Virus record (IMG/VR): IMGVR_UViG_3300047095_000752 | Span: 62,001 to 126,000 of that record | Length of the DNA stretch: 64,000 nt | Strand: one strand, 5' to 3' | In this document: piece by piece, positions 1,010 through 62,574 of the stretch | Layout of the letters: every line of letters begins with the position of its first letter | Position numbering within the stretch: the stretch's first letter is position 1 | Notes under the pieces: generated by a model | Seen by the model: only the letters and a program-made list of their open reading frames with translations | Told to the model about the DNA's origin: nothing | Databases searched by the model: none | Program-made: the position numbers and the translations under genes

Positions 1010-1029
1010 CAATAATTAATATATATAAT
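1010..1029 (-). promoter_or_regulatory. AT-rich repeated motif (putative phage early promoter)
   Basis: + strand CAATAATTAATATATATAAT, one of 9 near-identical copies upstream of minus-strand genes. Confidence 0.55.
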
Positions 1030-15547: not shown

Positions 15548-15567
15548 CAATACTTAATATATATAAT
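15548..15567 (-). promoter_or_regulatory. AT-rich repeated motif (putative early promoter)
   Basis: CAATACTTAATATATATAAT. Confidence 0.5.
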
Positions 15568-15829: not shown

Positions 15830-18313
15830 TTAACTCTTTAGTAGGATCGCTGACATGTACTGAGAAAATATTTCTTTCACGGGGTTTTGACGTGATACCT
15901 TAAAGGTTGCATCCCCCTTTTGAACGATCTCGGAAATCAATTCGTTTTTAACCCCGTGATCCGAACTCTGAGGTCCGAACAATTCATCGAGCAATACAGG
16001 TACATCCCAAGCAAGAAGCGAGTATAAGTCGCCTTCACCGATCTTCTGTCCGCCTCCTCGTTTAGCACCAGCCGTGGGAGCTAAAGTCCCAGTAGCATAG
16101 GAGCCGGTCGATCTCGCTGAAATCTTCTTATCCGACATATGCTCAAGTTTGTTTACATATAAATAACCAACCGAAATTGGATCTGTAATTTTATTATTAA
16201 ACGTAGGTAGCATTAATGGATATTTGGTTTTAAGTCCTAATACACGTAAAGCTTTTAATATATTATCTCTAGCTGGAGTTTTAAATGGAGGAAATACTAA
16301 AGGTACAAATCCGTTTTCTTTAATTTGATTGACCATATCCCTGTACATTGGATCGCTCATTGATTTAAGCTTAGTTATACTACTTTTACTGTAATGGAAT
16401 CCGTCTGTATTATCGAGAAGTGATAAAGCTGCAGCATATTTTGTGGTAAATTCTATTCTGGATTTTGTGGTTGCAATTATGGCTAACTCTTTGGCGATCA
16501 ACCCTGTGTGTAGCTCCATTAGCTGACCGGGGTTCATTCGATTAATTACAGATAGAGTTGAATATAACATTTCAATTTTACGACCATCTGGCATCCGAGG
16601 CATCTCATCATCGGGGACAATTGCCGCAACTACACCTTTATTGAACGCTCTATTATTAAGTTTATCCCCCTTGATCATTTGAAGCTCTTGTTGGATCGTG
16701 AATTTAATTAAGACCCCGATAAATGGCTTTCCACGTTCCTTAAATGACCCCAGAGGGTATCTACCATTGAGACGAGTGTAGCGCTCACGGAATGCTTCGA
16801 ACGCCGGTACAAGCAACTGAGGGATGTCCTCTTCGGGTATATTTGAATATACTTCGATATCTACAATCTTACCACCATCCGCTCTTAAGTGCTTCAAAGT
16901 TTGGGTATCGTAAAGGGTGGTAGAGTGTGTCATCAACACCGCCCCTTTATCTACATAATCCCCAATATTGGCTATAAATGAAAGATCGTCTTCTTCGGTT
17001 ATATACACACTTTGTTCTTCTTGGTGGAGAGATGTGAATCTTTTCGATGCACTTTCGCTCACAACCATGCCATCCTCGAAGTTATACCCATACCAAGGCA
17101 TAAACGCGCAAAGCATGTTGATCCCAGTGCTGATTATCCCATCCTTTACACCGGATCCTTCGGCTAAGATCTCTCCAGTTTTTACTTTTTGTCCGATCTT
17201 GACTAAAGTTTGAAATACTCCAAGTCCATTTTTGCCCTGCCCAGATTTTAACAACACAGGTTTAATATCTACAGCATGGATCTTATTTTTATCATCTCTT
17301 ATAATAATTTCAAGTGTAGTTATATCCGTAATGACACCATCAATGGGGGCTTTTTTAATAAACGAATCTGATAATAGACCCGATAATACACTTTCAAATC
17401 CAGTTTGGATCGCTGGAAATTCTTTATACTTAAGTGGGATCGCTTGTTTAGCCTGACCTGACGCCATGCAAACGCGAGCACCTTCATTTGATTCAACGAA
17501 TGGGATCATTGCCGGTCCGACAGAAAGGATCTCGTGCGGCATGACCTTTGATCGATCTCGTTCGGCAAATAATCCACGGGTGTTTGTTAGTGCAGATCCA
17601 ATCGTTAAATGTTGTAGGATCCCCATTTTATCCGATGCAGGTGTATCCAACGGATCGATGTTACCAAAATAGCTTGGGTGAATATTCATTGCTGCTGCGG
17701 GCCACGCTGCCGCTTTTGGGATCCCGCCGATCCCAATCGGCGTGATCCGCGTCAGCATGCTCAATTCCTCAAGTGGATTTATATTTTCAGCCGTAGTAAA
17801 GTTCTGACTTGTTACGATCAGACTCATAACGGTAGTGGGATTTATGAATAAACGGGCATCCTTATCACCTGAAAGGCGCTTTGACATATATTCGGTATAA
17901 GCCGCATTCAACTGCTTTTGGAGCAGAGATACGAATACTTCGGATGATCGAACGCGCAAGTTATGGGTGTCATTCCAATCGTCAATACGACCTTTTACTA
18001 CCTCCTCAACCATGTTTTGGATTATATATCTTAACTCGGTTGGGTGATTGCGGCTGGCCAAGATGTTCTTCTCAATAGCAGTCACGATATTATCGAGAAT
18101 GTTATTGAGGATATAGGTACAGTTTCTATTACCTATAGACTTTTCAAGAACACTCTGCCAGAACAATGGAGTTTCCATCGCATCTATATTTTTTGGGAAA
18201 AACGGAACAGATTTATTGAAGCATTCAATTTGTTGCTTCCCTGCCTCATTATTGTCCGCGCACTCGAATGTTGCAATTTGCCCATTAGGTAATTTTATAG
18301 ATCTATTGTACAT
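15830..18313 (-). CDS. rpoB: DNA-directed RNA polymerase beta subunit, C-terminal fragment
   Basis: NPLEELSMLTR, YNFEDG, GDKLNNRAFNKGVV, RMNPGQ, KLEHMSDKKISARSTG, GGQKIGE. Confidence 0.95.
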   Translation of the reverse strand: MYNRSIKLPNGQIATFECADNNEAGKQQIECFNKSVPFFPKNIDAMETPLFWQSVLEKSIGNRNCTYILNNILDNIVTAIEKNILASRNHPTELRYIIQNMVEEVVKGRIDDWNDTHNLRVRSSEVFVSLLQKQLNAAYTEYMSKRLSGDKDARLFINPTTVMSLIVTSQNFTTAENINPLEELSMLTRITPIGIGGIPKAAAWPAAAMNIHPSYFGNIDPLDTPASDKMGILQHLTIGSALTNTRGLFAERDRSKVMPHEILSVGPAMIPFVESNEGARVCMASGQAKQAIPLKYKEFPAIQTGFESVLSGLLSDSFIKKAPIDGVITDITTLEIIIRDDKNKIHAVDIKPVLLKSGQGKNGLGVFQTLVKIGQKVKTGEILAEGSGVKDGIISTGINMLCAFMPWYGYNFEDGMVVSESASKRFTSLHQEEQSVYITEEDDLSFIANIGDYVDKGAVLMTHSTTLYDTQTLKHLRADGGKIVDIEVYSNIPEEDIPQLLVPAFEAFRERYTRLNGRYPLGSFKERGKPFIGVLIKFTIQQELQMIKGDKLNNRAFNKGVVAAIVPDDEMPRMPDGRKIEMLYSTLSVINRMNPGQLMELHTGLIAKELAIIATTKSRIEFTTKYAAALSLLDNTDGFHYSKSSITKLKSMSDPMYRDMVNQIKENGFVPLVFPPFKTPARDNILKALRVLGLKTKYPLMLPTFNNKITDPISVGYLYVNKLEHMSDKKISARSTGSYATGTLAPTAGAKRGGGQKIGEGDLYSLLAWDVPVLLDELFGPQSSDHGVKNELISEIVQKGDATFKVSRQNPVKEIFSQYMSAILLKS

Positions 18314-18353: not shown

Positions 18354-18366
18354 TAGAAATTTGTCC
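18354..18366 (-). promoter_or_regulatory. Putative phage late promoter RACA-N6-TA
   Basis: GGACAAATTTCTA upstream of beta-C; 4 copies in the window. Confidence 0.55.
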
Positions 18367-18426
18367 TACGATATGATATCATATGTATATGTAGTATGTA
18401 AAAAGTTTAAATAAAAGGATTTAAAT

Positions 18427-22822: not shown

Positions 22823-22879
22823 CAATAATAAATATATATAATAAAAAAATAACCCCGCAGCCTGTAGTGGCAGCGGGGT
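22823..22879 (-). promoter_or_regulatory. Terminator hairpin fused to AT-rich promoter-like motif
   Basis: CCCCGC stem (22843-22879) abutting CAATAATAAATATATATAAT (22823-22842). Confidence 0.6.
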
Positions 22880-23506: not shown

Positions 23507-24664
23507 TTAATCAGTGAGTTTGCCTTTAAACCATTCCATGAACTCTTCTTGGTCGTATTTACCGGACTTCTGTCCATTCTCTTCTCTTGGTATTATTCTC
23601 AAGTTTTCTCTTAAATTGCAAATATTTTTTACTATTAGAGGACCATGAATATTATCTAGATCATTATCTATAAAAGCTTTACGGGGGAATATGTGATCTA
23701 CCGTGTAATCAGATCTATCCCATATATTACTTGATGCCTTGGCGACTTTTTGGGATTGGATGTGATTATTGTAGTTTGGATCGTCTTTTAATATATGTAG
23801 TTTACCATAATCAAACCCAAGATATGTCATTCTTAGAATACGGGTTCGATCTGGGTTAAATCTTGGATTGTTCTCACCTCTAACTTTATCATCTAAATAA
23901 CATTCCCGACACCGTTGTCCTATATTTTTAAAGTTATTAAATTTCATTTTAAATGTATGATTTCGGTCACATTTCATTATAAGGTATTTATGAGCATTTA
24001 TATATGTTTTACTTAATAAACTATAACCAAAACTTTCTATATGACTTTTAACGACTTCGTATTCGGGTCGAAATTTACCAAAACATTCTGGACATCGGTG
24101 ACCCACGTGAACAAACCCGACAAAACTCATTTCAAATATGTGATTATCCGGGCACTTGATTTTCATGTTTGTTTTATTGTTGATGTATTCTGTATCTAAC
24201 AGTAAATATCCTTCAACATTTATTTTAGACTTTACATAATTAAAATCATTTTTACGTTCCTGTGCAAATCGTATTGAGACGCACTTATTACATCGATTAT
24301 CCTGACTATAAAAACTGCTAAACCGTACCTTATATGTGTGGTCTGCGGGACATTTTATTGTTATTTTTGAGTTTACACCCTTATAATTTCCTATATCAAT
24401 TAATGTGTAACCATAGTCATTTAGTATTTTAGATATTTCATCAGATCCATGCTTGACCTCTTTCTTAATACATTTCTTACAACTAGTAGTCCGTCTAAAA
24501 TTATTATATGGTATCTCCGATATATTACCGCATGAGCATTTATATTTCATTTTGGTTTGTGTATTAATATATTCTTCTTTACTGACTAATAATACACAGT
24601 TTCGATCTAAATATGTTTGTAATACTTGTTCGTAGGGTACGGGTTTAGACATATGAATTTTCAT
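23507..24664 (-). CDS. HNH-family putative homing endonuclease with 4 zinc-ribbon repeats
   Basis: Repeats LLxxxYIN...KCxxxH.F...RCxxC; VDHIFP...NLRENLRII; likely start ATG 24664 (ORF track starts at 24778). Confidence 0.85.
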   Translation of the reverse strand: MKIHMSKPVPYEQVLQTYLDRNCVLLVSKEEYINTQTKMKYKCSCGNISEIPYNNFRRTTSCKKCIKKEVKHGSDEISKILNDYGYTLIDIGNYKGVNSKITIKCPADHTYKVRFSSFYSQDNRCNKCVSIRFAQERKNDFNYVKSKINVEGYLLLDTEYINNKTNMKIKCPDNHIFEMSFVGFVHVGHRCPECFGKFRPEYEVVKSHIESFGYSLLSKTYINAHKYLIMKCDRNHTFKMKFNNFKNIGQRCRECYLDDKVRGENNPRFNPDRTRILRMTYLGFDYGKLHILKDDPNYNNHIQSQKVAKASSNIWDRSDYTVDHIFPRKAFIDNDLDNIHGPLIVKNICNLRENLRIIPREENGQKSGKYDQEEFMEWFKGKLTD

Positions 24665-24723
24665 TCTAAAAATACCTACATGAACTTGTCGTGTAGGTAG
24701 TATATTTAATTTATTTATTTGAA

Positions 24724-26364
24724 CTAAGCTATGGTATAAGTGACACCATAATCTTTTAAACTTTCTTTTAATCCCCATTTATAAGCTAACACCATCAATA
24801 GGGGAAATTTGTAGGATCCCATGTACCCTATGAGGTATGCGCCGTTTTGGAGGAACTTACTGTGGATCTTCATGATCGAATACGATGATTCGAAGCGCCC
24901 TACGTTAATTGTGGGATAGAATATCGGATAACGTACGATCTGGTTGACTAGTATTTTCTGTTGTCCATTTATCACGAACGTTCCATTCGCAGTAAGATAC
25001 GGTAGGTCCACATGCACTTCGTGTATGTTACCCTCCGGATCTTTAAGTTGGATCTGGTAGCGCTCCTTGATCGATTGATATATCTCCGATGCTCCTGTAT
25101 GCACTTGTTTTACTTCCATACTCTTCAATTTCAGCGGAACATCTTTATCTTCGAGGAGTTTGAAGGCATCTGAGATATCATCTTTTAAATTAACTCTAAA
25201 ATCAGTCATACGTTTATTTAAAATATGTGCAGGGCTTTGATAATCTAAAAGCTTGGGTACATCGGCGGACTTAATGATCATATTCGTTGAAAAGTTTTTG
25301 GCAGGATCTCTTTTTAATAATTGAGTTACAAGTTTATTTATAATCTCAGCTTGCTTCTCAGGACTCTTCCGATCAATCTTCTTTGAAATTTCTTTAGCCT
25401 TCTCAAGATCACCCATAACGCTATAAACAACAGATCTTGTGATTAATTTATTATGATTTTCAAAATCTTTTTCGCGATCAATTGTAGAGTCAGCTTTTGT
25501 ATAGTTCTTAATAGCGTCCTGTACGATTTGTTCGTGCTGCTTACTTACGAGAGGAGATTCCTTAGTGGCTATTTGAGCTACTTCTTCAGCGTGATTTGAT
25601 TCCCCTGTGACTCCATCTGTATTTTGTTGTAGTCTTAATAGTATATTTTTAACTCGGACTAAACTATTATTTTTAGCTAAGACATCATACAGCTTTACGA
25701 AGCGCCCACCATCTTTATTATAAACGAACATTATAATTTTTTCGAATGGTATTGATTCTCTTTTACCAGCTTCTAACATTAATAACATATTAAAAAAGAT
25801 ATAACACTTCTTGTAGAATAGTTTATCGGATAAAGGCTTATCGACGTTCACGGCATATAACAAGATTGTTTCAAATTTATCTTTATCGATCTCACTAGCA
25901 GTTTCTAAATATTGATTATATAATTTAGATCCCTGACCTGTATCAAATCTTTTTGTACGATACATTAAGTCTACGGCGTTTAAATACCGTGTGGCATCGT
26001 AAAAGAAGTTGTATCCATTTACTTTAGTGTACTCACCGGGTCTACCTTTAATTGGTAGGAGGTCTCGATCTTTAATTAATTTTGTATATTCTGGGGTGAG
26101 ATATGATTGTGGTCTTGTTATGGTAGGTACAAAAACATATCGAGCATATTGCTTTTTGAAATTTAAAAAGTTATAGGTCTCTAATAAATTTACATTTTCA
26201 CCATAGAAATAAAAACATAAGTTCTTTTTACTATTTGGATCTTTTATTGGTATGACTAATTCATCATACGGTATAAAAAGCTTTTGGTTTAATAAATTCA
26301 TGTTGAGTACCTTATGTTCTTTAAATCCGGTATTGAAAATAATTGGGTTATTACGTAAACCCAA
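24724..26364 (-). CDS. rpoB: DNA-directed RNA polymerase beta subunit, N-terminal fragment with large N-terminal extension
   Basis: LPYLTANGTFVINGQQKILVNQIVRYP matches beta region IPLMTxxGTFxINGxERVxVSQLxRSP; likely start ATG 26301. Confidence 0.85.
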   Translation of the reverse strand: MGLRNNPIIFNTGFKEHKVLNMNLLNQKLFIPYDELVIPIKDPNSKKNLCFYFYGENVNLLETYNFLNFKKQYARYVFVPTITRPQSYLTPEYTKLIKDRDLLPIKGRPGEYTKVNGYNFFYDATRYLNAVDLMYRTKRFDTGQGSKLYNQYLETASEIDKDKFETILLYAVNVDKPLSDKLFYKKCYIFFNMLLMLEAGKRESIPFEKIIMFVYNKDGGRFVKLYDVLAKNNSLVRVKNILLRLQQNTDGVTGESNHAEEVAQIATKESPLVSKQHEQIVQDAIKNYTKADSTIDREKDFENHNKLITRSVVYSVMGDLEKAKEISKKIDRKSPEKQAEIINKLVTQLLKRDPAKNFSTNMIIKSADVPKLLDYQSPAHILNKRMTDFRVNLKDDISDAFKLLEDKDVPLKLKSMEVKQVHTGASEIYQSIKERYQIQLKDPEGNIHEVHVDLPYLTANGTFVINGQQKILVNQIVRYPIFYPTINVGRFESSYSIMKIHSKFLQNGAYLIGYMGSYKFPLLMVLAYKWGLKESLKDYGVTYTIA

Positions 26365-26399
26365 TTATAGTATATATTTATATATTTTTCAATATATTA

Positions 26400-27827
26400 T
26401 TAAAATAGAATACCCTTTTGCATAGCATCCATAACCTGTGCCCGTTCGGACTGTAGTGAGCTTACACACTGGGGATCGCCTTGGCATTGTTGGAGTAGAC
26501 CATCTATATTGCTTAATTTCAGTTTATTCATATAATTGATACAAGCTTGTTGTTTACCGCCAGTTAAATTTGCACAACCTTGTTCAGTATACTTTTCCTG
26601 TTTACGAGCTTGATGTCTTTTCCATAGTATTGAAGCTGCAGTACCGGCGGCGGCGAGACCACCGGCAACAGCAGTCGCCGTTTGTGCTGTTGGGGACATT
26701 TGTTTATATCCATTTATAACGGCATTAGCACCATTTTTAGCCCGTTGCATTATACTTGGACCCTTGGGTTCTTCCGGTGTACCCCTAACCATATTAGCCA
26801 GATCATAATATGTATATCCGGCTACACCCATACCTGCAGTCGCTCTAAGTGGTTTACGCATTAAATTACGGCCAGCTCCAGTCAATGAGTTACCGACCCA
26901 TTTTGGGGCGACTCCAGATTTAGCAACGGCGGCTCCACCTTTTCTAAGCCCTAATCCAGCCATTTTAGGTAGGAATCTGGCAGCCGCACCAATAGCAGCC
27001 CCAATTTCATTAAATGTATATACGCCATCAACCCAAGGTGAATAATAAGATTCTTCAAAGTTCATAGCCTCAGACATCTCATCTTCATCAAACTCATTGG
27101 CTACAAAATTAACAGGGGTATCGACTGTAGCCTTGTCTAAAATAGATGGTTTAGAACTTGTTATAATACTTCTAATCTTATTAATATTAGTATTTACACC
27201 TTTTTGATATAATAGCTTGTATTCTTTAGTTCCATTCTTAGGTGAATACTCACAATATATAATCTTATCGAATGGGACTTCGGAGTCAATGTTCTTAATA
27301 TTTTTAATCATAGCTAAATATAATGGTAGAATCTTTTTAGTTAATAACTTTTCGGAAAATTCCAAATCTGTATTTAATGTATATAATAATACTTTTTCGG
27401 AGTTACTCGGTGAATTATTACATAATAATTTAAAATATGAACTCATCAATTCTCTAAACTTCTGATGATTGAATACAGTGATATTGTACCTGTCAATGAT
27501 AGCATCAAAATATCGATTAGCGTCTATATAGGTGTGAAATTTATCGAAGTCTTTTAGCTCGTTCAAGTTAGCTTTAATAGGTACAAAACCAGCATCTTTT
27601 ATACCGACCTTGTAATCTGAATTCATATAGGTTCGGAACGGGGCTGGAGATGTGGGTACAACATACTTACGTATACCGTTACCTGTAAATTTAGACCCTT
27701 TTATTGCAGAAAGAGTATCTTCGTTTTCACTTAACACCATTATTGACAGTAGCTTACCACCAACTGGGGATGTGGTTACACTTATGTCATTATATGAAAT
27801 GTAGGGTTTAATTGATGAATATATCAT
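26400..27827 (-). CDS. Putative internal virion protein (N-domain shared with RNAP beta-N; Ala/Gly-rich, Cys-rich C-terminus)
   Basis: Manual alignment to both neighbours; function inferred. Confidence 0.55.
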   Translation of the reverse strand: MIYSSIKPYISYNDISVTTSPVGGKLLSIMVLSENEDTLSAIKGSKFTGNGIRKYVVPTSPAPFRTYMNSDYKVGIKDAGFVPIKANLNELKDFDKFHTYIDANRYFDAIIDRYNITVFNHQKFRELMSSYFKLLCNNSPSNSEKVLLYTLNTDLEFSEKLLTKKILPLYLAMIKNIKNIDSEVPFDKIIYCEYSPKNGTKEYKLLYQKGVNTNINKIRSIITSSKPSILDKATVDTPVNFVANEFDEDEMSEAMNFEESYYSPWVDGVYTFNEIGAAIGAAARFLPKMAGLGLRKGGAAVAKSGVAPKWVGNSLTGAGRNLMRKPLRATAGMGVAGYTYYDLANMVRGTPEEPKGPSIMQRAKNGANAVINGYKQMSPTAQTATAVAGGLAAAGTAASILWKRHQARKQEKYTEQGCANLTGGKQQACINYMNKLKLSNIDGLLQQCQGDPQCVSSLQSERAQVMDAMQKGILF

Positions 27828-27833
27828 TATTTA

Positions 27834-28796
27834 TTATCCAAGTTCGTTTAACTTTGCTCTAATTGCGGCGGTGCACTTATCAGGATTGTTGGCTAACTTA
27901 CAACGCTTCATTTTAGCCATTAATTCCTTGCGAACCTTATCCCCAACATGAGCTAAACACGCGGACTTCTTTTCGGGATCTTCGATTTTATTACAACCGT
28001 TATTATACCAGTCTTTTTTCTCTAATGCATCTTTAATTAATTTAGCTGCTAATACGGTACCACCAACGACGGCGGCTCCTGTGGCTACTTTGGATGTAGT
28101 AGAAGAGTTCTTTATACCAGATGCTACACTTCCGGCTTTTGCTTTTACGGAAGATGCGCCATTTGTAATAGCACGCACAATGGATGCGCGGCACCTACTT
28201 GGGTGTAACAGACACTCTCCTGTTATGCGCCCACTATCCACAGCGGCGTTAAATCCCGCCGTTGCAGCGGCAATACCACCTACTGTAGCGGCGGCGGATT
28301 GTACCATTAAGGACAACACTCTGGCTGATGCTTTGGGTACATCGACGGCACCAAGACGAACTGTCGCACCGACCCCAAGTTTGGCGGCGTTTGCTACACT
28401 TTTAACATTAGTGAAGTCATCTTTAATTTCATTAGCCGCCATACCTGTACCTAAAACTGCAGCACCTACTTTAGCTCTAGTACGAGTCTTATCCAACTCA
28501 CCCTTAAGCTGTAGGGCTTTACCCTTCCAAGCATCTTTACTTTTTAATTTTGCAAGGGTACCTTTCGGATCAGCTTTGAAATTCTTATATGAAGTCAATT
28601 TACCGAAGTCGATGCCTTTACTTACATCTCGTAGGGTATGCTTCTTAAATGCTTCCACTGGTACGGATACAAGCTTCTTACCAGCCTTCTTGGCACCGCT
28701 GCCTAAAAATTTCGCCAATTCCAGTCCGGTTTCGACTTTACCCGCTTCATTTATAACATCATCTTCGTAATATTTTTTCACTGTGTAACTCCTCAT
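27834..28796 (-). CDS. Putative internal virion protein (Ala/Gly/Lys-rich, 4-Cys C-terminal motif)
   Basis: Follows late-type motif; C-terminus GCx10-11C...C...C like 26400-27827. Confidence 0.55.
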   Translation of the reverse strand: MRSYTVKKYYEDDVINEAGKVETGLELAKFLGSGAKKAGKKLVSVPVEAFKKHTLRDVSKGIDFGKLTSYKNFKADPKGTLAKLKSKDAWKGKALQLKGELDKTRTRAKVGAAVLGTGMAANEIKDDFTNVKSVANAAKLGVGATVRLGAVDVPKASARVLSLMVQSAAATVGGIAAATAGFNAAVDSGRITGECLLHPSRCRASIVRAITNGASSVKAKAGSVASGIKNSSTTSKVATGAAVVGGTVLAAKLIKDALEKKDWYNNGCNKIEDPEKKSACLAHVGDKVRKELMAKMKRCKLANNPDKCTAAIRAKLNELG

Positions 28797-28813: not shown

Positions 28814-28826
28814 TATAAATTTGTCC
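28814..28826 (-). promoter_or_regulatory. Putative late promoter RACA-N6-TA
   Basis: GGACAAATTTATA, just downstream of a terminator at 28845-28874. Confidence 0.55.
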
Positions 28827-28894
28827 TAAAAATAAAAAGTCTACAAAAAAACACGGTAGTTATAATACCGTGTTAATCATTATTTTTTATTATA

Positions 28895-32781: not shown

Positions 32782-32794
32782 TATAAATTTGTTC
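32782..32794 (-). promoter_or_regulatory. Putative late promoter RACA-N6-TA
   Basis: GAACAAATTTATA directly upstream of the lysozyme RBS. Confidence 0.55.
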
Positions 32795-33255
32795 TATTTA
32801 TCCAAATTTACGGAAGGTACACTCAATTTAATCCAATAATATACAATCGCGCCCGGATGGATACTTCTAACGTCTACCCACTTGGAGTCTTTATTAGAGT
32901 ATATCATCCAAGCATTTGTATCATTGAAGGTCGAATGTTTAAACCCTATTTCAAATCCACGGTTAAATATATTTTTTTCTGTGTAAAATAATATAAAGTA
33001 TAATTGCTTTTTATCTTTACTCGTCTTAACCGGACTCAATTTTGACAGTAATGATATGTCAGCGTTATGGGTAAACCCTATATCAAAAAAAGTTGGATAT
33101 GGATAATGTCTATTATTTGTGTGTAGAAATTTATTTGCGGTGTATCTTGAATTTCCACTACCATCTTTATATTTTAATTTCACATGTTTAAAGTAATCTT
33201 TACTAATATCTTTCTTGCTTTTCATTAAATTTCCTTTCACAAAAAAATCACCCAC
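32794..33255 (-). CDS. Hypothetical protein (DUF551-like C-terminal family)
   Basis: LYFIL...EIGFK...W..Y...W...VYYWIKL, shared with 33975-34670. Confidence 0.55.
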   Translation of the reverse strand: MGDFFVKGNLMKSKKDISKDYFKHVKLKYKDGSGNSRYTANKFLHTNNRHYPYPTFFDIGFTHNADISLLSKLSPVKTSKDKKQLYFILFYTEKNIFNRGFEIGFKHSTFNDTNAWMIYSNKDSKWVDVRSIHPGAIVYYWIKLSVPSVNLDK

Positions 33256-33918: not shown

Positions 33919-33968
33919 CAATATTAAATATATATAATAAAAAAATAAAGGGAGGATGATACCTCCCT
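33919..33968 (-). promoter_or_regulatory. Terminator + AT-rich promoter-like motif
   Basis: AGGGAGG/CCTCCCT stem abutting CAATATTAAATATATATAAT. Confidence 0.6.
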
Positions 33969-38627: not shown

Positions 38628-38702
38628 CGTGGGTGTACTCCCAGTATTTTTGTTAAAGTTGATGGTTAATTCAATAATTGATATATATAATGTTACCCTC
38701 AC

Positions 38703-41943: not shown

Positions 41944-41997
41944 CAATATTAAATATATATAATAAAAACTAGCACAACTCCGATGGTTGTGCTAGTT
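41944..41997 (-). promoter_or_regulatory. Terminator + AT-rich promoter-like motif
   Basis: AACTAGCACAAC/GTTGTGCTAGTT stem abutting CAATATTAAATATATATAAT. Confidence 0.65.
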
Positions 41998-55727: not shown

Positions 55728-55766
55728 TTGATTTCCTGAAGTTTAAGATTAAACCATTCTATGAAT

Positions 55767-57323
55767 TTATTTCTTCTTTTCTTTTAATTTTTCTATACTC
55801 AACTCACTGAGGGGTTCGCCGAATAATACTTTTTCGATCTGTGAATATTTCTTCGAGTCTTTTGAGATCAACCCAAATGTTAAACTTTTACCAAGGTTCT
55901 CATAGGCGACCCCCAGAGACCACGATATAATCGAAGGAAGAGATTTAATGCTATGTAATTCCGGATCGTATGGATCCTTCAATCTGGCTGCAATCATCGG
56001 ATCTTTCTTATTTCTTAAAATCGTTGCGAGGATGACCTCAAGGTGGCAACTATCCCAAGGTCCAAAAGTACTTAGAGCTTCGTAAAACTTCTTGTATAGG
56101 TTCTCTGGGGTCTCCCATGGACCCTTGCCCGCAACCAATGAGTCTAGGCTCTGGGCGATCTTTTCAGGAGCGATCTTAAAGAATTTAATTGTAAATAATT
56201 TAACATCTTTACCATACATTAAAGTGATACTATCAGCAGTTTCATTATAATCATCGTGGATATTAATTTCAACAGGCATTTCAATAGTAGCATTAACTTC
56301 AATATTACCAATATACATTCTAAAATAGCCTAAAGGTAACTTATAAGTATTTCCTACTTTTTCAATTGCATACTCGTCCTTGAAGATACTTTTATTGATC
56401 TTAATCGTTGTTACTTCAGCGCTGGAGTATAGATCGTTATCTTTTTGATATACCATACCTGATAAATATTTTTCTTCGTCATCTGTAATAGAGTCCGCAA
56501 GTTCTTTTAAGATATCCACCTTCTTGAAGACTACGGCCCCGCCTGTGTGAAATGAATTGTGTGTCTGAACATTATTATTCAAAAATTCTTCGGAGTCAGT
56601 TTTAAGATCATATACATATCCACAATATCCCTCTATACCGGGAACTACCTGCTCAATATCAATGTAATCATTAATATCCTGTATAAGCTTATCTGAAGGC
56701 ACAGCATTCTTTAAAGTCCAATATACAAGTCCGTCTTCAGTATTAATATCAAAGTTACAAGTATGACTTAAATGATCTGCTACAAGCTTCAACTGTGATA
56801 CAAAGTTAAAACTAAAAATCTTAGACTTGGTGTTGACTTTATCGTCGGACTTAATATTATCAAATAAGAAATGATATAAAAGGTATGTTAAGTTACTAGT
56901 ACTTATTTTAGATAAATAATCAGGATTAATACAAAAATTATATATCGAATCGCCATTAAAATATTCGGAATGATTTGCAATTATATGTAAATTAGGATCT
57001 TCAAATATATTCAACAAAATGTCAAATAGTATATCTACATCAGGCGGCTCTACCCCGTAAACAAATTCTAATTTACGTTCGGTGTTATCAACCCAAATTC
57101 TATCATGGAACATTACTATATCTTTAGCTTCAACCACCGTAGGTTGCCCGTCAAGCGACTGAATCCATACAGGGTGGTCTTCTTGGCAAAACAGCATATG
57201 TCCAGTCACAGTGCGAATAAAGCACATTGGTGCCGTTGGTGTATGCCTTTGGATCTTATATGCTCGGGTTAAACCGTCTTTACCCACGACATTGAGATCT
57301 AACTCTTTAGTTTCTAAATTCAT
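55767..57323 (-). CDS. rpoC: Split-intein C-part (256 aa) fused to RNA polymerase beta' C-terminal fragment
   Basis: CQEDHPVW (block B), VYDL (block F), QTHN|SFHTGG (block G + trigger loop), HLEVILATI, AYEN. Confidence 0.9.
   Translation of the reverse strand: MNLETKELDLNVVGKDGLTRAYKIQRHTPTAPMCFIRTVTGHMLFCQEDHPVWIQSLDGQPTVVEAKDIVMFHDRIWVDNTERKLEFVYGVEPPDVDILFDILLNIFEDPNLHIIANHSEYFNGDSIYNFCINPDYLSKISTSNLTYLLYHFLFDNIKSDDKVNTKSKIFSFNFVSQLKLVADHLSHTCNFDINTEDGLVYWTLKNAVPSDKLIQDINDYIDIEQVVPGIEGYCGYVYDLKTDSEEFLNNNVQTHNSFHTGGAVVFKKVDILKELADSITDDEEKYLSGMVYQKDNDLYSSAEVTTIKINKSIFKDEYAIEKVGNTYKLPLGYFRMYIGNIEVNATIEMPVEINIHDDYNETADSITLMYGKDVKLFTIKFFKIAPEKIAQSLDSLVAGKGPWETPENLYKKFYEALSTFGPWDSCHLEVILATILRNKKDPMIAARLKDPYDPELHSIKSLPSIISWSLGVAYENLGKSLTFGLISKDSKKYSQIEKVLFGEPLSELSIEKLKEKKK
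56556..57323 (-). mobile_element. IntC half of atypically split intein with degenerate endonuclease-like insert
   Basis: Residues 1-256; ends His-Asn followed by Ser+1. Confidence 0.88.
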
Positions 57324-57333
57324 TTACAGTTCC

Positions 57334-57603
57334 TTAAATAATAGGTGAAGATGCTAATTGCCAATATACGGGCGCGTAATATTCTTCCGGGACATGTGAT
57401 TTTTTGTAGTTCTTTTCGCCTTCCCAGCAACCCATATGTTTATATTGACTAAACTTTTTATTATATCTTAATAAACATATCTTAAATTCACGAGGTTCTT
57501 CGGAATAATATAATGCACGTGTTAAACAGTCGTTGTCAGGGAGTTTATCAACGGTTTTAATCCAGTTGCTTAAATTAATTTCGTCTTTACTTATTTTGTG
57601 CAT
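57334..57603 (-). CDS. DUF551-like small protein
   Basis: WIKTVDKLPD...PVYWQL. Confidence 0.65.
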   Translation of the reverse strand: MHKISKDEINLSNWIKTVDKLPDNDCLTRALYYSEEPREFKICLLRYNKKFSQYKHMGCWEGEKNYKKSHVPEEYYAPVYWQLASSPII

Positions 57604-57605
57604 TG

Positions 57606-59324: not shown

Positions 59325-59343
59325 TTAATATTTTCTTTCGTAA

Positions 59344-60834
59344 TTAGTTTTGGTCCCAAAGTTCATCTAATGAGATTATACCATGCTTTTCCGTATTTAC
59401 CAACCCCGTTGAACACTTCATAATCTTTTCTGATAACGAACAACAGGCTTGGGCAGCAAGCATACCCAGTGCCCGTGACTTTACCTGATAAATCAAATCG
59501 CCATAACAAGTGCGGCATATTTCACGACTTTTGCAAAATGTAGGGCTACGGAGTTCTACGAACTTTCCGATATGTGCATCAGTCAGTCTTTCTACCTTCC
59601 GATCCTTCTGATTTATAATATAACGACCTTGCATCCGACCAAATAATTCGGATGTTATCTTAAGTTTTAGTCCTCGTTTAGTTCCACAATCCGCATTTGT
59701 GATGTCACCCTCACACGATCCAATCGAATACACCATTTTACGATATGCATATCCACCGAACGCGGTATTTACGGCACGGTCAATAATACCCTTACGACTA
59801 CCTGCGGCGGATTCTAGGTATTGCTCAGGATCGAAACCATCAACCAACGCTTTTTCGACAGGCGGAAGGAGTTCGCCACTGGCGTTACTGATCAATCCTT
59901 TGGATACCATAATCTGACGCAATTGCGATCCACCCTTGGCCGCCCCACTTGCTATCTGGATATAAAGTCCTTCTTCTTGTGTCCTCAAATATTCCATCAA
60001 GGCAACATCCATCTCATCTAAAATTTTAATTTGTTTATTTACATCCGGCTCAGCCTTAAGTTTCTTTGAAAGGCTTTTTAATTCGGGTGAAGGTATAAAC
60101 ATATCTAAACTAATAGTCTGGGGATATTGAGTAGCAGCCTCGAAGGACATCTTGCACATCTTATCAATTGTAAGTGCGAAATCAGCTTTGTTTTTAAGCA
60201 TCACTTCTTTTAATACTTTACTCACATCTCTCGCATTCATAGGTTTATCTATAAATGGAATGTAAGATGGGAGAACACTATTGAATATAACTCTACCTGC
60301 GGTTGTGTTTGTAAGCCCGATATTCGTGTTGATCCGGACGGGATCCCCCGGATGTAGTTTTTCAGCATCTTGTACATTGTTTATAACTCTTATAGGTTTT
60401 TTATTTTCCAAGTAAGTAATTGTAAAAATACCGATATTCATTTCTTTTGATAGTGAAAAGTTAGGAGAATTTAAGAATTCAAAGCCCTGTGTTGTAATCA
60501 TTTTATTCTTAACTTCATTCTGAGCTTCAATTGAAATTGGGACGACAATAGCCATTTGGTCACCATCGAAATCCGCCATGTAAGGACCCACAACAACCGG
60601 GTGAATATCAATAGTCGGTCCATCGATTATAGTAACGTAAGCACCTTGGATCCGTCCTCTTTCGACGTTAGGATCACGTTTATATAATACTACTCGATTT
60701 TTATCTTCGATTTCTTTTACTGCGATTTTTCGAATAGTATCATAAATTATAGGATTTACTTTATATCCCTTAGAGATGTATTTCAATATCTTACGGATAT
60801 CGTCGATGGAGACTTTTTCACTTTCATGTAACAT
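59344..60834 (-). CDS. rpoC: RNA polymerase beta' middle (catalytic) fragment fused to split-intein N-part
   Basis: YMADFDGDQM, SGAAKG, GSRKGIIDRAVNTAFGGYAYRKM (bridge helix), DCGT/RSPTFC/CRTCYG, GMLAAQ. Confidence 0.95.
   Translation of the reverse strand: MLHESEKVSIDDIRKILKYISKGYKVNPIIYDTIRKIAVKEIEDKNRVVLYKRDPNVERGRIQGAYVTIIDGPTIDIHPVVVGPYMADFDGDQMAIVVPISIEAQNEVKNKMITTQGFEFLNSPNFSLSKEMNIGIFTITYLENKKPIRVINNVQDAEKLHPGDPVRINTNIGLTNTTAGRVIFNSVLPSYIPFIDKPMNARDVSKVLKEVMLKNKADFALTIDKMCKMSFEAATQYPQTISLDMFIPSPELKSLSKKLKAEPDVNKQIKILDEMDVALMEYLRTQEEGLYIQIASGAAKGGSQLRQIMVSKGLISNASGELLPPVEKALVDGFDPEQYLESAAGSRKGIIDRAVNTAFGGYAYRKMVYSIGSCEGDITNADCGTKRGLKLKITSELFGRMQGRYIINQKDRKVERLTDAHIGKFVELRSPTFCKSREICRTCYGDLIYQVKSRALGMLAAQACCSLSEKIMKCSTGLVNTEKHGIISLDELWDQN
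59347..59415 (-). mobile_element. IntN half (23 aa) of atypically split intein
   Basis: CSTGLVNTEKHGIISLDELWDQN-stop, intein block A pattern beginning with Cys1. Confidence 0.85.
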
Positions 60835-60855
60835 TCAGGATTCCTTTAATACGTA

Positions 60856-61218
60856 TTAATCCAATTGCTTATATCGTTTATCTAATTCGTTAATTAAAGC
60901 GTGGATACTATCGTCCATTTTATATTTATTTGCTGTCGCCCAAGATCCAGCATAAGCATTATCATCTTCTTTTATTTCCGGTGTTATTTCAAGAACGGAT
61001 ACGAGAGCCTCATACAGTTTGTGTGTATCTATTGATTTGTATGTACTGTCTCTATCTCTTGATTTATCAAGTTCACTTCTTAATTGTAGTAATTCTTGTA
61101 TATACTCAGCATTCTGTTTTTTTAATGTACTGATAATGGATATTGAATCTATATTTGATCCTTCATACTTATCCATATCGTTTATATTGAGACCAAAAGA
61201 TCCATTTTCAGATTCCAT
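60856..61218 (-). CDS. Hypothetical protein
   Basis: 120 aa, between beta' fragments. Confidence 0.65.
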   Translation of the reverse strand: MESENGSFGLNINDMDKYEGSNIDSISIISTLKKQNAEYIQELLQLRSELDKSRDRDSTYKSIDTHKLYEALVSVLEITPEIKEDDNAYAGSWATANKYKMDDSIHALINELDKRYKQLD

Positions 61219-61233
61219 TTAAATACCCTTTTG

Positions 61234-61560
61234 TTAAATGCCTCTGCTGTACTCTTCTTGTGCATCTGCTAAGACAGGTACAACATACCGAGTATAACCT
61301 CTTCGTCCATCACTTACAAATTTTGGGGCAGCGATAAAGTGGGCGGCTTGCTTATCATTCTTCATCTTAAATGGAAATTTACCATCCCATCCTTCGACTT
61401 TGTCTAAGTTCGTCTCGCCAACTTCAACTTTAGTACCATCTGATAATTTAATATCATTCGGGATACCATTACCTTCAAAATCATCATTAGCCTTATACTT
61501 GAGGATTTCTTTCTTGGTCATACTATCAATTTGTTCGAATATAATCTTTTTCAATACCAT
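61234..61560 (-). CDS. Hypothetical protein (possible head protein)
   Basis: 108 aa, AAGGA RBS, N-terminal IIFEQ. Confidence 0.65.
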   Translation of the reverse strand: MVLKKIIFEQIDSMTKKEILKYKANDDFEGNGIPNDIKLSDGTKVEVGETNLDKVEGWDGKFPFKMKNDKQAAHFIAAPKFVSDGRRGYTRYVVPVLADAQEEYSRGI

Positions 61561-61578
61561 TGTTATTTCCTTTGTGGG

Positions 61579-62499
61579 TTAATCGTCTTCTAATAAATCG
61601 GATTCTTGAGATAAGAATTTCTTAACTTCTATGTGAAATTCATCGGGAATCATGCTTTTGTATGGTGAATTAATAATGCCATATATAAGATATGGTTCAA
61701 AAAGCTGACACGCTAGTCGTAATGGTACACCAACATTACCAACTTTTAATTTATAATTCGGTGTAATGACCGCACGAGCAGAATAGTCCACCCGCTTACC
61801 CAGAAGATGGTTTCGTATCAGACCTTCCTTCTTGGATACTTTTACTTTTACAAGCTCATATAGATCTCGCATAAATAATTGCATTCTATAACTGAAAATA
61901 TCAAACAACTGACCGGATACACTACCTAACTGAGTTCCTGCCATAATTATTTTTTGATATAACTTTGTGAGATCATCGATCTGGATATCCCCAGTAATTT
62001 CGTCAATCTGAATTGGTCTATATTCGGGTGAAATTACAGGTAATTTATTTATAAAGAAAGTTCGATCATCAACTGCTTTGTAAAGTACATCGATAATCTT
62101 ATTTCGGTCTCCACCCTCTTCACCGGTCGAAAAACGTATCTTATGGATGTTGTTTACAAATGCAGTCATACCATTAATATCACCCATATCATCTTCGACT
62201 AAATTATTATTCGAATCCAGTGAAAATATGGCTTCCCCAGATAATAAGTCGGGGATGCGTCTAAAGATACGCTTCTCTAAAATATCATATAGAAATGGGT
62301 GAACAACATTACAGTTTAGATCAATCCAAGAATAATTAGAACGTCTCTCTTTAGATCCTTCTACCCCGAAGATAGTTTCTGAATATAAACCTTGAGGGTG
62401 GAAATTCATAGACTTATCGAAGTAGATTTGATGTGATGTTATAGCTTCTAGTGCCTTCTTTTCTTTTAAAAAGACATCTACGTGAATTGGTTCGATCAT
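61579..62499 (-). CDS. rpoC: RNA polymerase beta' N-terminal fragment
   Basis: GLYSETIFG, LPVISPEYRP, DDLTKLYQKII, GLIRNHLLGKRVDYSARAVI, LFEPY. Confidence 0.93.
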   Translation of the reverse strand: MIEPIHVDVFLKEKKALEAITSHQIYFDKSMNFHPQGLYSETIFGVEGSKERRSNYSWIDLNCNVVHPFLYDILEKRIFRRIPDLLSGEAIFSLDSNNNLVEDDMGDINGMTAFVNNIHKIRFSTGEEGGDRNKIIDVLYKAVDDRTFFINKLPVISPEYRPIQIDEITGDIQIDDLTKLYQKIIMAGTQLGSVSGQLFDIFSYRMQLFMRDLYELVKVKVSKKEGLIRNHLLGKRVDYSARAVITPNYKLKVGNVGVPLRLACQLFEPYLIYGIINSPYKSMIPDEFHIEVKKFLSQESDLLEDD

Positions 62500-62510
62500 A
62501 AAAATACCTC

Positions 62511-62574
62511 TAAAAATTTGTCCAATTAATTAAATTTTATAAAAAAACATGGTGGAAATACATATTCCACCATG
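62511..62574 (-). promoter_or_regulatory. Terminator (62541-62574) followed by putative late promoter (62511-62523)
   Basis: CATGGTGGAA/TTCCACCATG stem; GGACAAATTTTTA. Confidence 0.6.

What the first reader, a model, noticed from the sequence alone, without database searches (positions are those of the whole stretch)
24724..27827. RNAP beta-N carries a ~230-aa N-terminal domain shared with the adjacent non-polymerase protein
Seen by manual alignment: beta-N RYVFVPT..PQSYLTPEY..IKD..LPIK / FFYDATRYLNAV / TILLYAVNVDKPLSDKLFYKK / IPFEKII / KLY...RVKNIL versus 26400-27827 RKYVVPT..FRTYMNSDY..IKD..VPIK / TYIDANRYFDAI / KVLLYTLNTDLEFSEKLLTKK / VPFDKII / LLY...KIRSII. Both are followed by acidic linkers. 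Cellular beta subunits have no such domain. Inference: a portable capsid-packaging or ejection tag fused to different cargoes, which would mark this RNAP as the virion-packaged enzyme.
Basis: partly seen in the sequence, partly recalled or inferred. Interest (0 to 1): 0.75.

Follow-up and report, generated by a model that had tools for sequence, protein, structure and literature searches.

The report
Phage RNA polymerase domain with neighbouring copy
A giant phage's probable virion RNA polymerase carries an extra ~230-residue N-terminal domain, and the neighbouring gene holds a diverged copy of it, which suggests a polymerase-specific partner pair for assembly or packaging and not a general packaging tag.

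Summary
The beta-N subunit (true start ATG 26301, 525 aa) and the upstream 475-aa protein share a ~230-aa N-terminal domain (26% identity over 217 aa, E 1e-15). The pair is conserved in related contigs.

An exhaustive profile search found 107 protein clusters with the domain, always at residue 1. Most are RNA polymerase beta subunits. The rest are free copies, some encoded between beta' and beta.

A confident model (pLDDT 95) gives an alpha/beta fold resembling P-loop NTPases but without a Walker A motif. Its only clear structural matches are the PBS1 protein that corresponds to AR9's virion-RNAP beta, and a protein with the length of phiR1-37's structural beta subunit g099.

Five indirect lines indicate that this polymerase set is the virion-packaged one.

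The "portable tag on different cargoes" reading is only partly supported. Each genome has at most two carriers, and many free copies carry no cargo. In this lineage the free copy ends in a hydrophobic-helix plus four-cysteine module shared with six other ORFs, including the gene just upstream.

My best reading is a polymerase-specific domain pair acting in assembly or packaging, possibly cleaved off by the encoded T4-type prohead protease. Function is inferred, not shown.

The parts
24724..26301 (-). beta-N subunit of RNA polymerase set B (525 aa from the ATG at 26301). [quoted passage not shown]
   Evidence: Homologues are 524-525 aa and end at the same residue. PHROG RNA polymerase beta gives a weak hit. 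Residues 422-497 align with E. coli RpoB 110-183, E 5e-9.
25597..26301 (-). Copy 1 of the ~230-aa N-terminal domain (beta-N residues 1-235).
   Evidence: The AlphaFold model has pLDDT 94.9 and pTM 0.91. 107 clusters carry the domain at residue 1.
25546..25569 (-). Conserved motif A-T-K-E/S-P-L-V about 20 residues after the domain (residues 245-252). It is a candidate prohead-protease site, cutting after Glu with Ser at P1'.
   Evidence: The E-S is kept in 7 of 8 beta-N homologues. Cleavage itself is inferred only.
24727..25038 (-). Stretch of beta-N that is alignable with cellular beta, containing the GTFVINGxxxxxVxQ motif.
26400..27827 (-). Neighbouring 475-aa protein. Layout: paralogous N-terminal domain, acidic linker, Gly/Ala-rich region, C-terminal hydrophobic helix plus four-cysteine module.
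27123..27827 (-). Copy 2 of the N-terminal domain (residues 1-235 of the neighbour).
27042..27062 (-). Conserved F-x-E motif (NFEE/SYY) directly after the acidic FDEDE run. It is a second candidate processing site.
   Evidence: The same pattern is visible in the L001, L003 and L004 orthologues. Cleavage is inferred only.
26421..26684 (-). C-terminal module of the neighbour: a Gly/Ala-rich hydrophobic helix, a basic stretch, then W/Y..GC-x10-C ... C-x5-C in this protein (C-x6-C in ORF320).
   Evidence: A profile of the ORF320 family hits it at E 1.2e-7. Eight extended free paralogues all end in this module.
27834..28796 (-). ORF320, the first gene of the unit. It has a variable Gly/Ala-rich body and the same C-terminal helix plus four-cysteine module (27840-28100). 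It has no copy of the N-terminal domain.
   Evidence: No Pfam or PHROG match.
28817..28828 (-). Late-type promoter-like motif TAGGACAAATTT(ATATA), 22 nt upstream of ORF320's start codon and heading the unit ORF320 - neighbour - beta-N.
   Evidence: The motif sits at the same position in L001, L003, L004 and L005. It resembles the AR9 late consensus AACA-6N-TA (PMC5312081).
28850..28874 (-). Terminator-like hairpin followed by a T-run. It closes the upstream unit just before the motif.
15830..18313 (-). beta-C subunit of set B (827 aa), preceded by the same motif at 18357-18368.
   Evidence: Pfam Rpb2_6 match, PHROG RNA polymerase beta, motif.
61579..62499 (-). beta'-N piece of set B (306 aa), preceded by the motif variant TTGGACAAATTT at 62514-62525.
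   Evidence: SPN3US gp240 (virion beta'-N) hits only this ORF, E 1.6e-11.
59344..60834 (-). Middle beta' piece of set B (496 aa).
55767..57323 (-). ORF of 518 aa whose C-terminal ~270 residues are the beta' C-terminal region of set B.
   Evidence: 53% identity to residues 855-1125 of the L001 beta' and a match to the C-terminus of the set-A beta'.
23507..24778 (-). Free-standing HNH homing endonuclease. It overlaps the 3' end of beta-N by 55 nt and is absent at this place in relatives.
   Evidence: PHROG endonuclease / HNH endonuclease at E 4e-39 and 3e-37, plus a Pfam CapR domain.

Best explanation
The ~230-aa domain is the lineage-specific N-terminal domain of the virion-type RNA polymerase beta subunit in a large, mostly uncultured group of jumbo phages. 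It is a compact alpha/beta domain that resembles P-loop NTPases but has no Walker A motif.

The neighbouring gene is a tandem paralogue of that domain. It is co-transcribed with beta-N from a late-type promoter.

My proposed mechanism is inferred, not shown. The free copy pairs with the beta-fused copy, or with the same partner. This makes it an accessory or adaptor subunit that acts before transcription, during assembly of the polymerase and its incorporation into, or release from, the head.

In this lineage the free copy also carries a C-terminal hydrophobic-helix plus four-cysteine module shared with six other ORFs. The protein would therefore bridge the polymerase to whatever structure those proteins form.

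The domain may then be cut off by the encoded T4 gp21-type prohead protease at a conserved Glu-Ser motif about 20 residues downstream. The precedent is the N-terminal 275 residues of the 201phi2-1 virion polymerase beta subunit, which are removed in that way.
For: Shown directly:
- The two copies are homologous, and the pair is conserved in relatives.
- 107 clusters carry the domain, always at the N-terminus. Of the 59 proteins of 300 aa or more, 48 fall in one family that includes full-length beta subunits with polymerase matches.
- Free copies of 251-269 aa lie directly upstream of beta (between beta' and beta in L038) and are 27-28% identical to that beta's own domain, E 4e-30 and 1e-35.
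- On the domain tree the free copies form two well-supported clades, each nested among beta-borne domains. A free copy therefore arose or was kept repeatedly.
- The model has pLDDT 94.9. Its only clear structural matches are PBS1 A0A223LD65 (E 1.4e-6, TM 0.56) and G4KK38 (E 1e-5, TM 0.61).
- These correspond by length and by AR9/PBS1 kinship to the first exon of AR9 gp188, annotated as a virion RNAP subunit, and to phiR1-37 g099, annotated as a phage structural protein.

Evidence that set B is the virion type:
- The set-A beta groups with non-virion polymerases, SH-aLRT 89.
- SPN3US virion beta'-N hits only the set-B beta'.
- The set-B beta' is in three ORFs, as described for virion enzymes in PMC7598289.
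- The late-like motif GGACAAATTT precedes all three set-B units, here and in L001-L005.
- The same motif also heads a baseplate-wedge gene cluster.
- The set-A operon lies downstream of an abundant early-like motif that resembles the AR9 early consensus.

Evidence bearing on processing:
- A Peptidase_S77 prohead protease is encoded, E 6.7e-18.
- A conserved E-S motif follows the domain.
- The 201phi2-1 virion beta loses a 275-residue N-terminal propeptide, while SPN3US gp241 keeps its N-terminal region (PMC5694885).

Evidence for the adaptor architecture.
Against: - No direct evidence exists that any of these proteins is in a virion or is cleaved.
- The surrounding genes are DNA-metabolism genes, not head genes.
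- The backbone of the beta tree is unresolved, and set B does not group with the phiKZ-type virion clade.
- Sequence profiles do not connect the domain to the N-terminal regions of SPN3US gp241, phiKZ gp178 or the 201phi2-1 beta. The propeptide precedent is therefore an analogy of position and length, not shown homology.
- hhalign support for the AR9 and phiR1-37 N-termini is weak, probability 24-34%.
- Foldseek does not report which part of the target was aligned.
- Pairing of the two copies is pure inference.
- Three relatives have no second copy within 10 kb, and AR9 has none next to gp188. A free partner is therefore not obligatory.
- The 12-mer late-like motif is only modestly enriched in the window: 4 observed against 1.15 expected, and 2 of 100 shuffles reach 4.
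Confidence: 0.45

Rival explanations
1. The domain is a general, portable capsid-targeting propeptide. Any protein carrying it is delivered into the prohead core, and the tag is then removed by the prohead protease, as with the T4 capsid-targeting sequence.
For: - The domain is strictly N-terminal in all 107 clusters.
- An acidic linker and a conserved Glu-containing motif follow it in both paralogues.
- A Peptidase_S77 prohead protease is encoded.
- There is precedent for a long propeptide on the 201phi2-1 virion polymerase beta, and for capsid-targeting sequences in T4 (PMC5694885 and PMC10052503).
Against: - Only two carriers exist per genome. No other protein in the 245-kb record has the domain.
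- Many free copies carry no cargo at all, only an acidic tail of 20-45 residues.
- The free copy is encoded inside the polymerase gene cluster, not in the head module.
- A folded 230-aa alpha/beta domain is far larger than the known T4 tag.
- SPN3US keeps the N-terminal region of its virion polymerase beta in mature heads.
Confidence: 0.2
2. The domain is a working part of the transcription enzyme and not a packaging device. The fused and free copies could form an assembly platform that stands in for the missing alpha dimer. Alternatively they could form a promoter-specificity or nucleotide-binding regulatory module for early transcription.
For: - Jumbo-phage polymerases lack alpha subunits and known initiation factors (PMC7598289 and PMC5312081).
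- In L038 the free copy is encoded between beta' and beta, with gaps of only 28 and 3 nt. This suits stoichiometric co-production with the enzyme.
- There are two copies, one attached to beta, which recalls alpha-I and alpha-II.
- Conserved polar residues (E35, N36, Y149) and a Walker-B-like hydrophobic strand ending in Asp (D154, invariant in the 12-sequence alignment) survive across 89 sequences.
- SPN3US retains the N-terminal region in the mature enzyme.
Against: - No structural similarity to the alpha N-terminal domain appeared in any search. The best solved matches are P-loop-type GTPases and kinases at Z of about 7, which is background level.
- There is no Walker A motif.
- A free copy is missing near beta in three relatives and in AR9.
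- In 201phi2-1 the N-terminal 275 residues are removed from the mature enzyme, although homology of that region to this domain is not shown.
Confidence: 0.2
3. The neighbour is a decaying or neutral by-product of a tandem duplication of the 5' end of the beta gene and has no function of its own.
For: - The two copies are adjacent and only 26% identical.
- The middle part of the neighbour is highly variable in length and composition, giving proteins of 284 to 654 aa.
Against: - The neighbour's domain is 45-53% identical among orthologues whose beta-N domains are 54-58% identical to the window's. This indicates similar purifying selection on both.
- Intact ORFs persist across deep divergence, in two separate clades.
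- The C-terminal module is conserved in eight extended forms.
- The operon structure and upstream motif are conserved.
Confidence: 0.03

Closest known systems
N-terminal region of the virion RNA polymerase beta subunit of AR9/PBS1 (gp188) and phiR1-37 (g099)
   Same: - Same position, at residue 1 of a virion-type beta subunit.
- Same predicted fold: Foldseek probability 1.0, E 1e-5 to 1e-6, TM 0.56-0.61.
- Weak colinear profile matches at the N-termini.
   Different: - No significant sequence similarity by HMMER.
- AR9 has no recognisable free paralogue among the neighbours of gp188.
- To my knowledge the domain has not been described as a family or given a function.
N-terminal propeptide of the 201phi2-1 virion polymerase beta subunit (cleaved at TFE-275), and the uncleaved N-terminal region of SPN3US gp241 (PMC5694885)
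   Same: - A long non-polymerase N-terminal extension of ~250-300 residues on the virion beta subunit.
- A gp21-type prohead protease that cuts after Glu is encoded in the same genome.
   Different: - Profile and profile-profile comparisons find no similarity, so homology is not shown.
- No paralogous neighbour is reported for those phages.
T4 capsid-targeting sequence of internal proteins
   Same: An N-terminal element followed by a prohead-protease site after Glu.
   Different: - From my own knowledge, the T4 tag is about 10 residues and sits on several unrelated cargoes.
- Here the element is a folded 230-aa domain found on only one enzyme subunit and its own paralogue.
SRP54/FtsY/FlhF-type and zeta/PPK2-type P-loop NTPase domains
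   Same: A three-layer alpha/beta arrangement. These are consistently the top solved-structure matches. From my own knowledge, SRP54 and FtsY are paralogous domains that work as a heterodimer, which makes them a useful analogy for a fused and free pair.
   Different: - Z is at most 7.2, which is at the tool's stated background.
- TM is about 0.3 in Foldseek.
- There is no Walker A motif. The domain is not a member of these families.

Membership tests
Jumbo-phage virion RNA polymerase (vRNAP) beta subunit | Homology to the beta subunit, including the catalytic double-psi beta-barrel region | tested here: met
   Pfam Rpb2_6 hits beta-C at 99 + 35 bits. PHROG RNA polymerase beta families match. 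beta-N aligns with RpoB 110-183.
Jumbo-phage virion RNA polymerase (vRNAP) beta subunit | A second, paralogous multisubunit polymerase set in the same genome | tested here: met
   Set A lies at G000 51248-57993, with a beta of 1012 aa and a beta' of 902 aa.
Jumbo-phage virion RNA polymerase (vRNAP) beta subunit | Groups with known virion enzymes and not with non-virion enzymes | tested here: inconclusive
   Set A joins the non-virion clade at SH-aLRT 89. Set B forms its own clade in an unresolved backbone. The virion beta'-N of SPN3US hits only set B.
Jumbo-phage virion RNA polymerase (vRNAP) beta subunit | Long N-terminal non-polymerase extension | tested here: met
   Roughly 310 residues precede the part with a cellular counterpart, judged from beta-N 422 aligning with RpoB 110. 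The fold matches PBS1 A0A223LD65 and G4KK38, which correspond to AR9 gp188 and phiR1-37 g099.
Jumbo-phage virion RNA polymerase (vRNAP) beta subunit | Genes expressed late | tested here: inconclusive
   This rests only on promoter-like motifs. A late-type motif precedes all three set-B units and is conserved in relatives. No expression data are available.
Jumbo-phage virion RNA polymerase (vRNAP) beta subunit | Protein present in purified virions | not testable with these tools
   The genome is a metagenomic record, and no proteome exists for it.
Capsid-targeting propeptide removed by the prohead protease | N-terminal location on the precursor | tested here: met
   The domain starts at or near residue 1 in essentially all of the 107 clusters, apart from a few N-truncated fragments.
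Capsid-targeting propeptide removed by the prohead protease | Cognate gp21-type prohead protease encoded | tested here: met
   Peptidase_S77 at 65.3 bits against a cut-off of 27, located at G000 240325-241083 next to the portal gene.
Capsid-targeting propeptide removed by the prohead protease | Protease recognition site at the domain boundary | tested here: inconclusive
   A conserved x-x-E/S motif in beta-N and an F-x-E motif in the neighbour fit cleavage after Glu. The specificity of this protease is unknown.
Capsid-targeting propeptide removed by the prohead protease | Shared by several unrelated packaged proteins | tested here: not met
   Only beta-N and its paralogue carry it in 245 kb. 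Many free copies have no cargo.
P-loop NTPases | Walker A motif GxxxxGK[ST] after the first strand | tested here: not met
   The position holds a nearly invariant E-N and no Gly-Lys.
P-loop NTPases | Fold similarity clearly above background | tested here: inconclusive
   The best Z is 7.2 and Foldseek TM is about 0.3. The tool's notes put typical background at Z 7-8.
RNA polymerase alpha-subunit N-terminal domain (assembly platform) | Alpha N-terminal-domain fold | tested here: not met
   No alpha chain appears among the Foldseek or VIA matches to solved structures. One 'alpha' label in BFVD belongs to a 787-aa phage polymerase fragment.

The most novel reading that the evidence does not exclude
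The beta-fused domain and its free paralogue form a heterodimer of inactivated NTPase-like domains. In this lineage the free partner's C-terminal hydrophobic-helix plus four-cysteine module plugs the polymerase into an assembly built from the six other ORFs that carry the same module. That would make a dedicated docking system that loads a multisubunit RNA polymerase into the head, or guides it out during ejection.
Probability: 0.2. Interest if true: 0.75.

Novelty: new variant of a known kind. Interest (0 to 1): 0.55.

Why it matters
How jumbo phages load a five-piece RNA polymerase into the capsid and deliver it through the tail is an open question. Work on SPN3US shows that the enzyme must be assembled before it enters the prohead, but no targeting element is known (PMC5694885).

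This finding contributes three things:
- It defines a conserved, confidently modelled N-terminal domain on the beta subunit across more than 100 protein clusters.
- It links that domain by structure to the virion enzymes of AR9/PBS1 and phiR1-37.
- It shows that phages repeatedly keep a free copy beside it, in this lineage fused to a module shared with other small proteins.

That gives specific constructs and protein pairs to test for polymerase packaging, processing and ejection.

Tried and rejected
- Pfam and PHROGs give nothing for the domain or the neighbour.
- megablast and tblastn of both proteins against 50,697 phage records find no match.
- A profile search of solved-structure sequences finds nothing.
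- HMMER profiles of 8 and of 95 copies find no third copy in the genome. They find no match in SPN3US gp240-246, phiKZ gp178, the 201phi2-1 beta, AR9 or phiR1-37 proteins.
- hhalign against the phiKZ-type N-terminal regions gives probability 0.1-0.2.
- None of the six AR9 neighbours tested (gp190-193, gp196, gp197) is a paralogue of the gp188 N-terminus.
- The ESM Atlas feature hits to restriction-enzyme recognition domains were dismissed. The recognition score was 1731, far below the tool's reliability level. The hits probably reflect composition. The Atlas search of the neighbour's C-terminal half was uninformative.
- A weak phmmer hit of the SPN3US protease to ORF 55767-57323 (E 0.003) was rejected. 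The C-terminal part of that ORF is beta', and the real S77 protease lies elsewhere.
- Rfam finds no intron or other RNA family in the window.
- The sigma-70 promoter scan is at chance level: 50 found against 53 expected.
- BLASTP does not detect the C-terminal module shared by ORF320 and the neighbour. Only profiles detect it.
Full report
**Setting**

The window is bases 62001-126000 of a 245,225-bp, 35% G+C viral record estimated about 78% complete. It encodes a portal, a large terminase, a baseplate wedge protein and a tail lysin. It also carries many DNA-metabolism genes, so it is a jumbo tailed phage.

It has two sets of multisubunit RNA polymerase genes:
- Set A is a compact operon just left of the window, with a beta of 1012 aa and a beta' of 902 aa.
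- Set B is scattered through the window.
  - beta-C is at 15830-18313 and beta-N at 24724-26301.
  - beta' is in three ORFs, at 61579-62499, 59344-60834 and 55767-57323.

**The observation**

The two products share 26% identity over 217 residues with three gaps, E 1e-15. The beta-N gene really starts at the ATG at 26301. Seven of the eight hits are homologues of 524-525 aa that cover 96% of the query, consistent with that start (N-termini aligned). They also end at the same residue as the window's protein.

In four related contigs the gene directly upstream of beta-N carries the same domain. Both domains are followed by acidic stretches.

The first part of beta-N that aligns with E. coli RpoB is residues 422-497 against RpoB 110-183. 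The domain plus a ~190-residue linker region therefore precede the alignable core, and roughly 310 of these residues have no cellular counterpart.

**How widespread the domain is**

A profile of 12 copies was searched against 1.84 billion representative proteins. It found 107 clusters at E of 0.001 or better, 31 of them below 1e-30. The domain starts at or near residue 1 in essentially all of them, apart from a few N-truncated fragments.

Of the 59 proteins of 300 aa or more:
- 48 fall into one family by their remaining sequence. This family includes full-length proteins of 1343-1742 aa as well as split beta-N forms. A sampled member matches bacterial beta subunits strongly, and the members whose contigs were fetched carry Pfam Rpb2 domains.
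- The remainder are free copies.

Some short hits are fragments. For example, P0045 belongs to a cluster that also holds a 1415-aa protein. Others are genuine complete genes:
- P0066 (251 aa) sits between beta' and a 1381-aa beta.
- P0034 (269 aa) sits directly upstream of a 1747-aa beta.
- In each case the free copy is 27-28% identical to the domain on that same beta.

Three other relatives have no second copy within 10 kb of beta.

On a tree of the domain, the free copies form two well-supported clades (SH-aLRT 97 and 98). Each clade is nested among beta-borne domains of its own lineage. A free copy has therefore been generated or homogenised more than once.

None of the sampled clusters carries a name or comes from a named organism.

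**Structure**

With 12 sequences the model had pLDDT 74. With 89 sequences it reached pLDDT 94.9 and pTM 0.91. It is a three-layer alpha/beta domain.

Solved structures give only background-level similarity. The best Z is 7.2 and Foldseek TM is about 0.3. The matches are consistently P-loop-type GTPases and kinases: SRP54, FtsY, FlhF, zeta toxin and PPK2. There is no Walker A motif. The loop after the first strand holds a nearly invariant Glu-Asn.

Among predicted viral structures, two hits stand clear of the rest with both models:
- PBS1 A0A223LD65 (921 aa): E 2e-7 and 1.4e-6.
- G4KK38 (1393 aa): E 3e-5 and 1e-5, TM 0.61.

By length and by kinship to AR9, the PBS1 protein corresponds to the first exon of AR9 gp188. 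That gene is annotated as [quoted passage not shown]. G4KK38 has the length of phiR1-37 g099, annotated as "RNA polymerase beta subunit; phage structural protein".

Profile-sequence alignments place the similarity at the very N-termini of both proteins, but weakly (P 4e-4 and 8.5e-4, probability 24-34%). Nothing links the domain by sequence to the N-terminal regions of SPN3US gp241, phiKZ gp178 or the 201phi2-1 beta.

**Is set B the virion enzyme?**

Five indirect lines agree.
1. The structural link just described.
2. On a beta tree, set A joins the non-virion enzymes of AR9, phiR1-37, SPN3US and 201phi2-1 (SH-aLRT 89). Set B and all the domain-bearing betas form a separate clade. The backbone is unresolved, so set B is not shown to be sister to the phiKZ-type virion clade.
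3. The virion beta'-N of SPN3US (gp240) hits only the set-B beta'-N piece.
4. The set-B beta' is in three ORFs. That is the architecture described for virion enzymes, whereas non-virion enzymes have two pieces (PMC7598289).
5. The genome has two classes of promoter-like motif.
   - An abundant motif, TATTATATATATTAAWTATTG, gives 8 matches in the window against 0.18 expected, 7 of them on the coding strand. It often sits directly after terminator hairpins. It resembles the AR9 early consensus AAATATATATTAT-6N-G, which the virion enzyme reads (PMC5312081). One copy at 1010-1027 lies upstream of the operon that contains set A.
   - A rarer motif, (T)AGGACAAATTT(ATATA), resembles the AR9 late consensus AACA-6N-TA. 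Its first base lies 26-55 nt upstream of the first gene of each of the three set-B units.
     - The same three positions carry it in L001.
     - The corresponding positions carry it in L002-L005.
     - It also heads a cluster that contains a baseplate wedge gene.
     - The 12-mer alone is only modestly enriched in the window: 4 observed against 1.15 expected. Its weight comes from position, orientation and conservation.

I put the probability that set B is the packaged enzyme at about 0.75.

**The transcription unit and the neighbour's other half**

A terminator-like hairpin at 28850-28874 is followed by the late-like motif at 28817-28828. Then come ORF320, the neighbour, beta-N and an HNH endonuclease gene. 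After these lie the next early-like motifs (a variant near 23482 and a better match at 22823-22840).

ORF320 has no copy of the N-terminal domain, but a profile of its family hits the C-terminus of the neighbour (E 1.2e-7). The shared module has three parts:
- a Gly/Ala-rich, weakly hydrophobic helix (Kyte-Doolittle mean of about 1.4 over 19 residues);
- a basic stretch;
- the pattern W/Y..GC-x10-C ... C-x6-C (C-x5-C in the neighbour).

Seven ORFs of the genome carry this module. One of them, at G000 179240-179647, has the late-like motif 33 nt upstream of its start. All eight extended free paralogues in the database, lengths 396-654 aa, end in it.

The short free paralogues end instead in acidic tails of about 20-45 residues.

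So the neighbour is a two-ended protein. One end resembles the polymerase's own N-terminal domain. The other is a module shared with a small family of proteins.

**Mechanism**

What is shown:
- The two copies are homologous.
- The domain is strictly N-terminal.
- It is tied to one beta lineage, with a recurrent free copy beside it.
- The fold is confidently modelled.
- The neighbour has a two-ended architecture.
- A Peptidase_S77 (T4 gp21-type) prohead protease is encoded next to the portal gene.

What is inferred:
- The fused and free copies interact.
- They act in assembly or packaging.
- The domain is removed at the conserved Glu-Ser motif (ATKE/SPLV, residues 245-252, kept in 7 of 8 homologues), or at the F-x-E motif of the neighbour.

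The precedent is that the 201phi2-1 virion beta subunit loses a 275-residue N-terminal propeptide to its prohead protease. SPN3US, in contrast, keeps the equivalent region, and its five subunits must assemble before entering the prohead (PMC5694885; PMC10052503).

A general packaging tag fits the data poorly for three reasons. There are at most two carriers per genome. Many free copies have no cargo. The free copy is encoded within the polymerase cluster.

A role in the working enzyme, as an assembly platform or a specificity module, cannot be excluded. The tight placement of the free copy between beta' and beta favours that reading.

**Verdict**

Its interpretation is partly right: the enzyme is probably the virion one. 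It is partly too broad: the domain is not a portable tag for assorted cargoes.

A long N-terminal extension on the virion beta subunit is already known. Three things appear to be undescribed in the literature searched here:
- the definition of this domain as a family;
- its structural link to the AR9/PBS1 and phiR1-37 enzymes;
- the recurrent free paralogue with its adaptor-like architecture.

Noticed in passing
window 1010-1027, 15548-15565, 22823-22840, 33919-33936, 38672-38689, 41944-41961, 54924-54941 (all minus strand): A strongly over-represented ~21-nt AT-rich motif, TATTATATATATTAAWTATTG. It gives 8 matches against 0.18 expected and often lies directly after a terminator hairpin. It closely resembles the AR9 early (virion-polymerase) promoter consensus, so these are probably this phage's early promoters.
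   Followed up: partly
window 18357-18368, 28817-28828, 32785-32796, 62514-62525 (minus strand); also G000 23863, 44680, 152294, 179211, 210252: A second promoter-like motif, (T)AGGACAAATTT(ATATA), whose first base lies 26-70 nt upstream of start codons. It is similar to the AR9 late consensus AACA-6N-TA. It precedes all set-B polymerase units, a baseplate gene cluster and a small four-cysteine protein. It is conserved at the same places in related contigs.
   Followed up: partly
window 27840-28100 and 26421-26684; G000 179240-179647, 179589-180008, 131588-131962, 142766-142996, 229198-229692: A seven-member family of ORFs sharing a C-terminal module: a Gly/Ala-rich hydrophobic helix, a basic stretch, then GC-x10-C ... 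C-x6-C. There is no Pfam or PHROG match. It may be a membrane-anchoring or oligomerising module of internal or ejection proteins. The function is unknown.
   Followed up: partly
window 55767-62499: The set-B beta' gene is broken into three ORFs of 306, 496 and 518 aa. A 572-aa HNH homing endonuclease gene (57606-59324) lies between the middle and C-terminal pieces. A 745-nt gap lies between the N-terminal and middle pieces, which split Pfam domain Rpb1_2 at profile positions 49 and 90. In relative L001 the middle and C-terminal parts are one 1135-aa ORF with a faint LAGLIDADG match. No Rfam intron was found.
   Followed up: partly
window 23507-24778: A free-standing HNH endonuclease with a CapR domain overlaps the end of beta-N by 55 nt. 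It is absent at this position in relatives. Homing endonuclease genes cluster around the polymerase genes of this phage.
   Followed up: no
window 26339-26368: A perfect 11-bp-stem hairpin (ATAATTGGGTT...AACCCAATTAT) lies in the 98-nt spacer between the neighbour's stop codon and the beta-N start. Relatives have only 3-32 nt there. It might attenuate or regulate beta-N expression.
   Followed up: no
window 15830-18313 and G000 51248-54286: Both beta subunits of this phage are much closer to bacterial beta subunits (E 1e-63 and 5e-72) than to the AR9 non-virion enzyme (E 1e-24 and 5e-29). They are each other's nearest relatives outside their own clades, at 28% identity. This phage group therefore has far less diverged polymerases than phiKZ-type phages.
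   Followed up: partly
window 54475; G000 536 and 40600: A third recurrent upstream sequence, GACTATATATATTTTAACAAGAG(W)G, occurs three times in front of genes. It is distinct from the main early-like motif.
   Followed up: no
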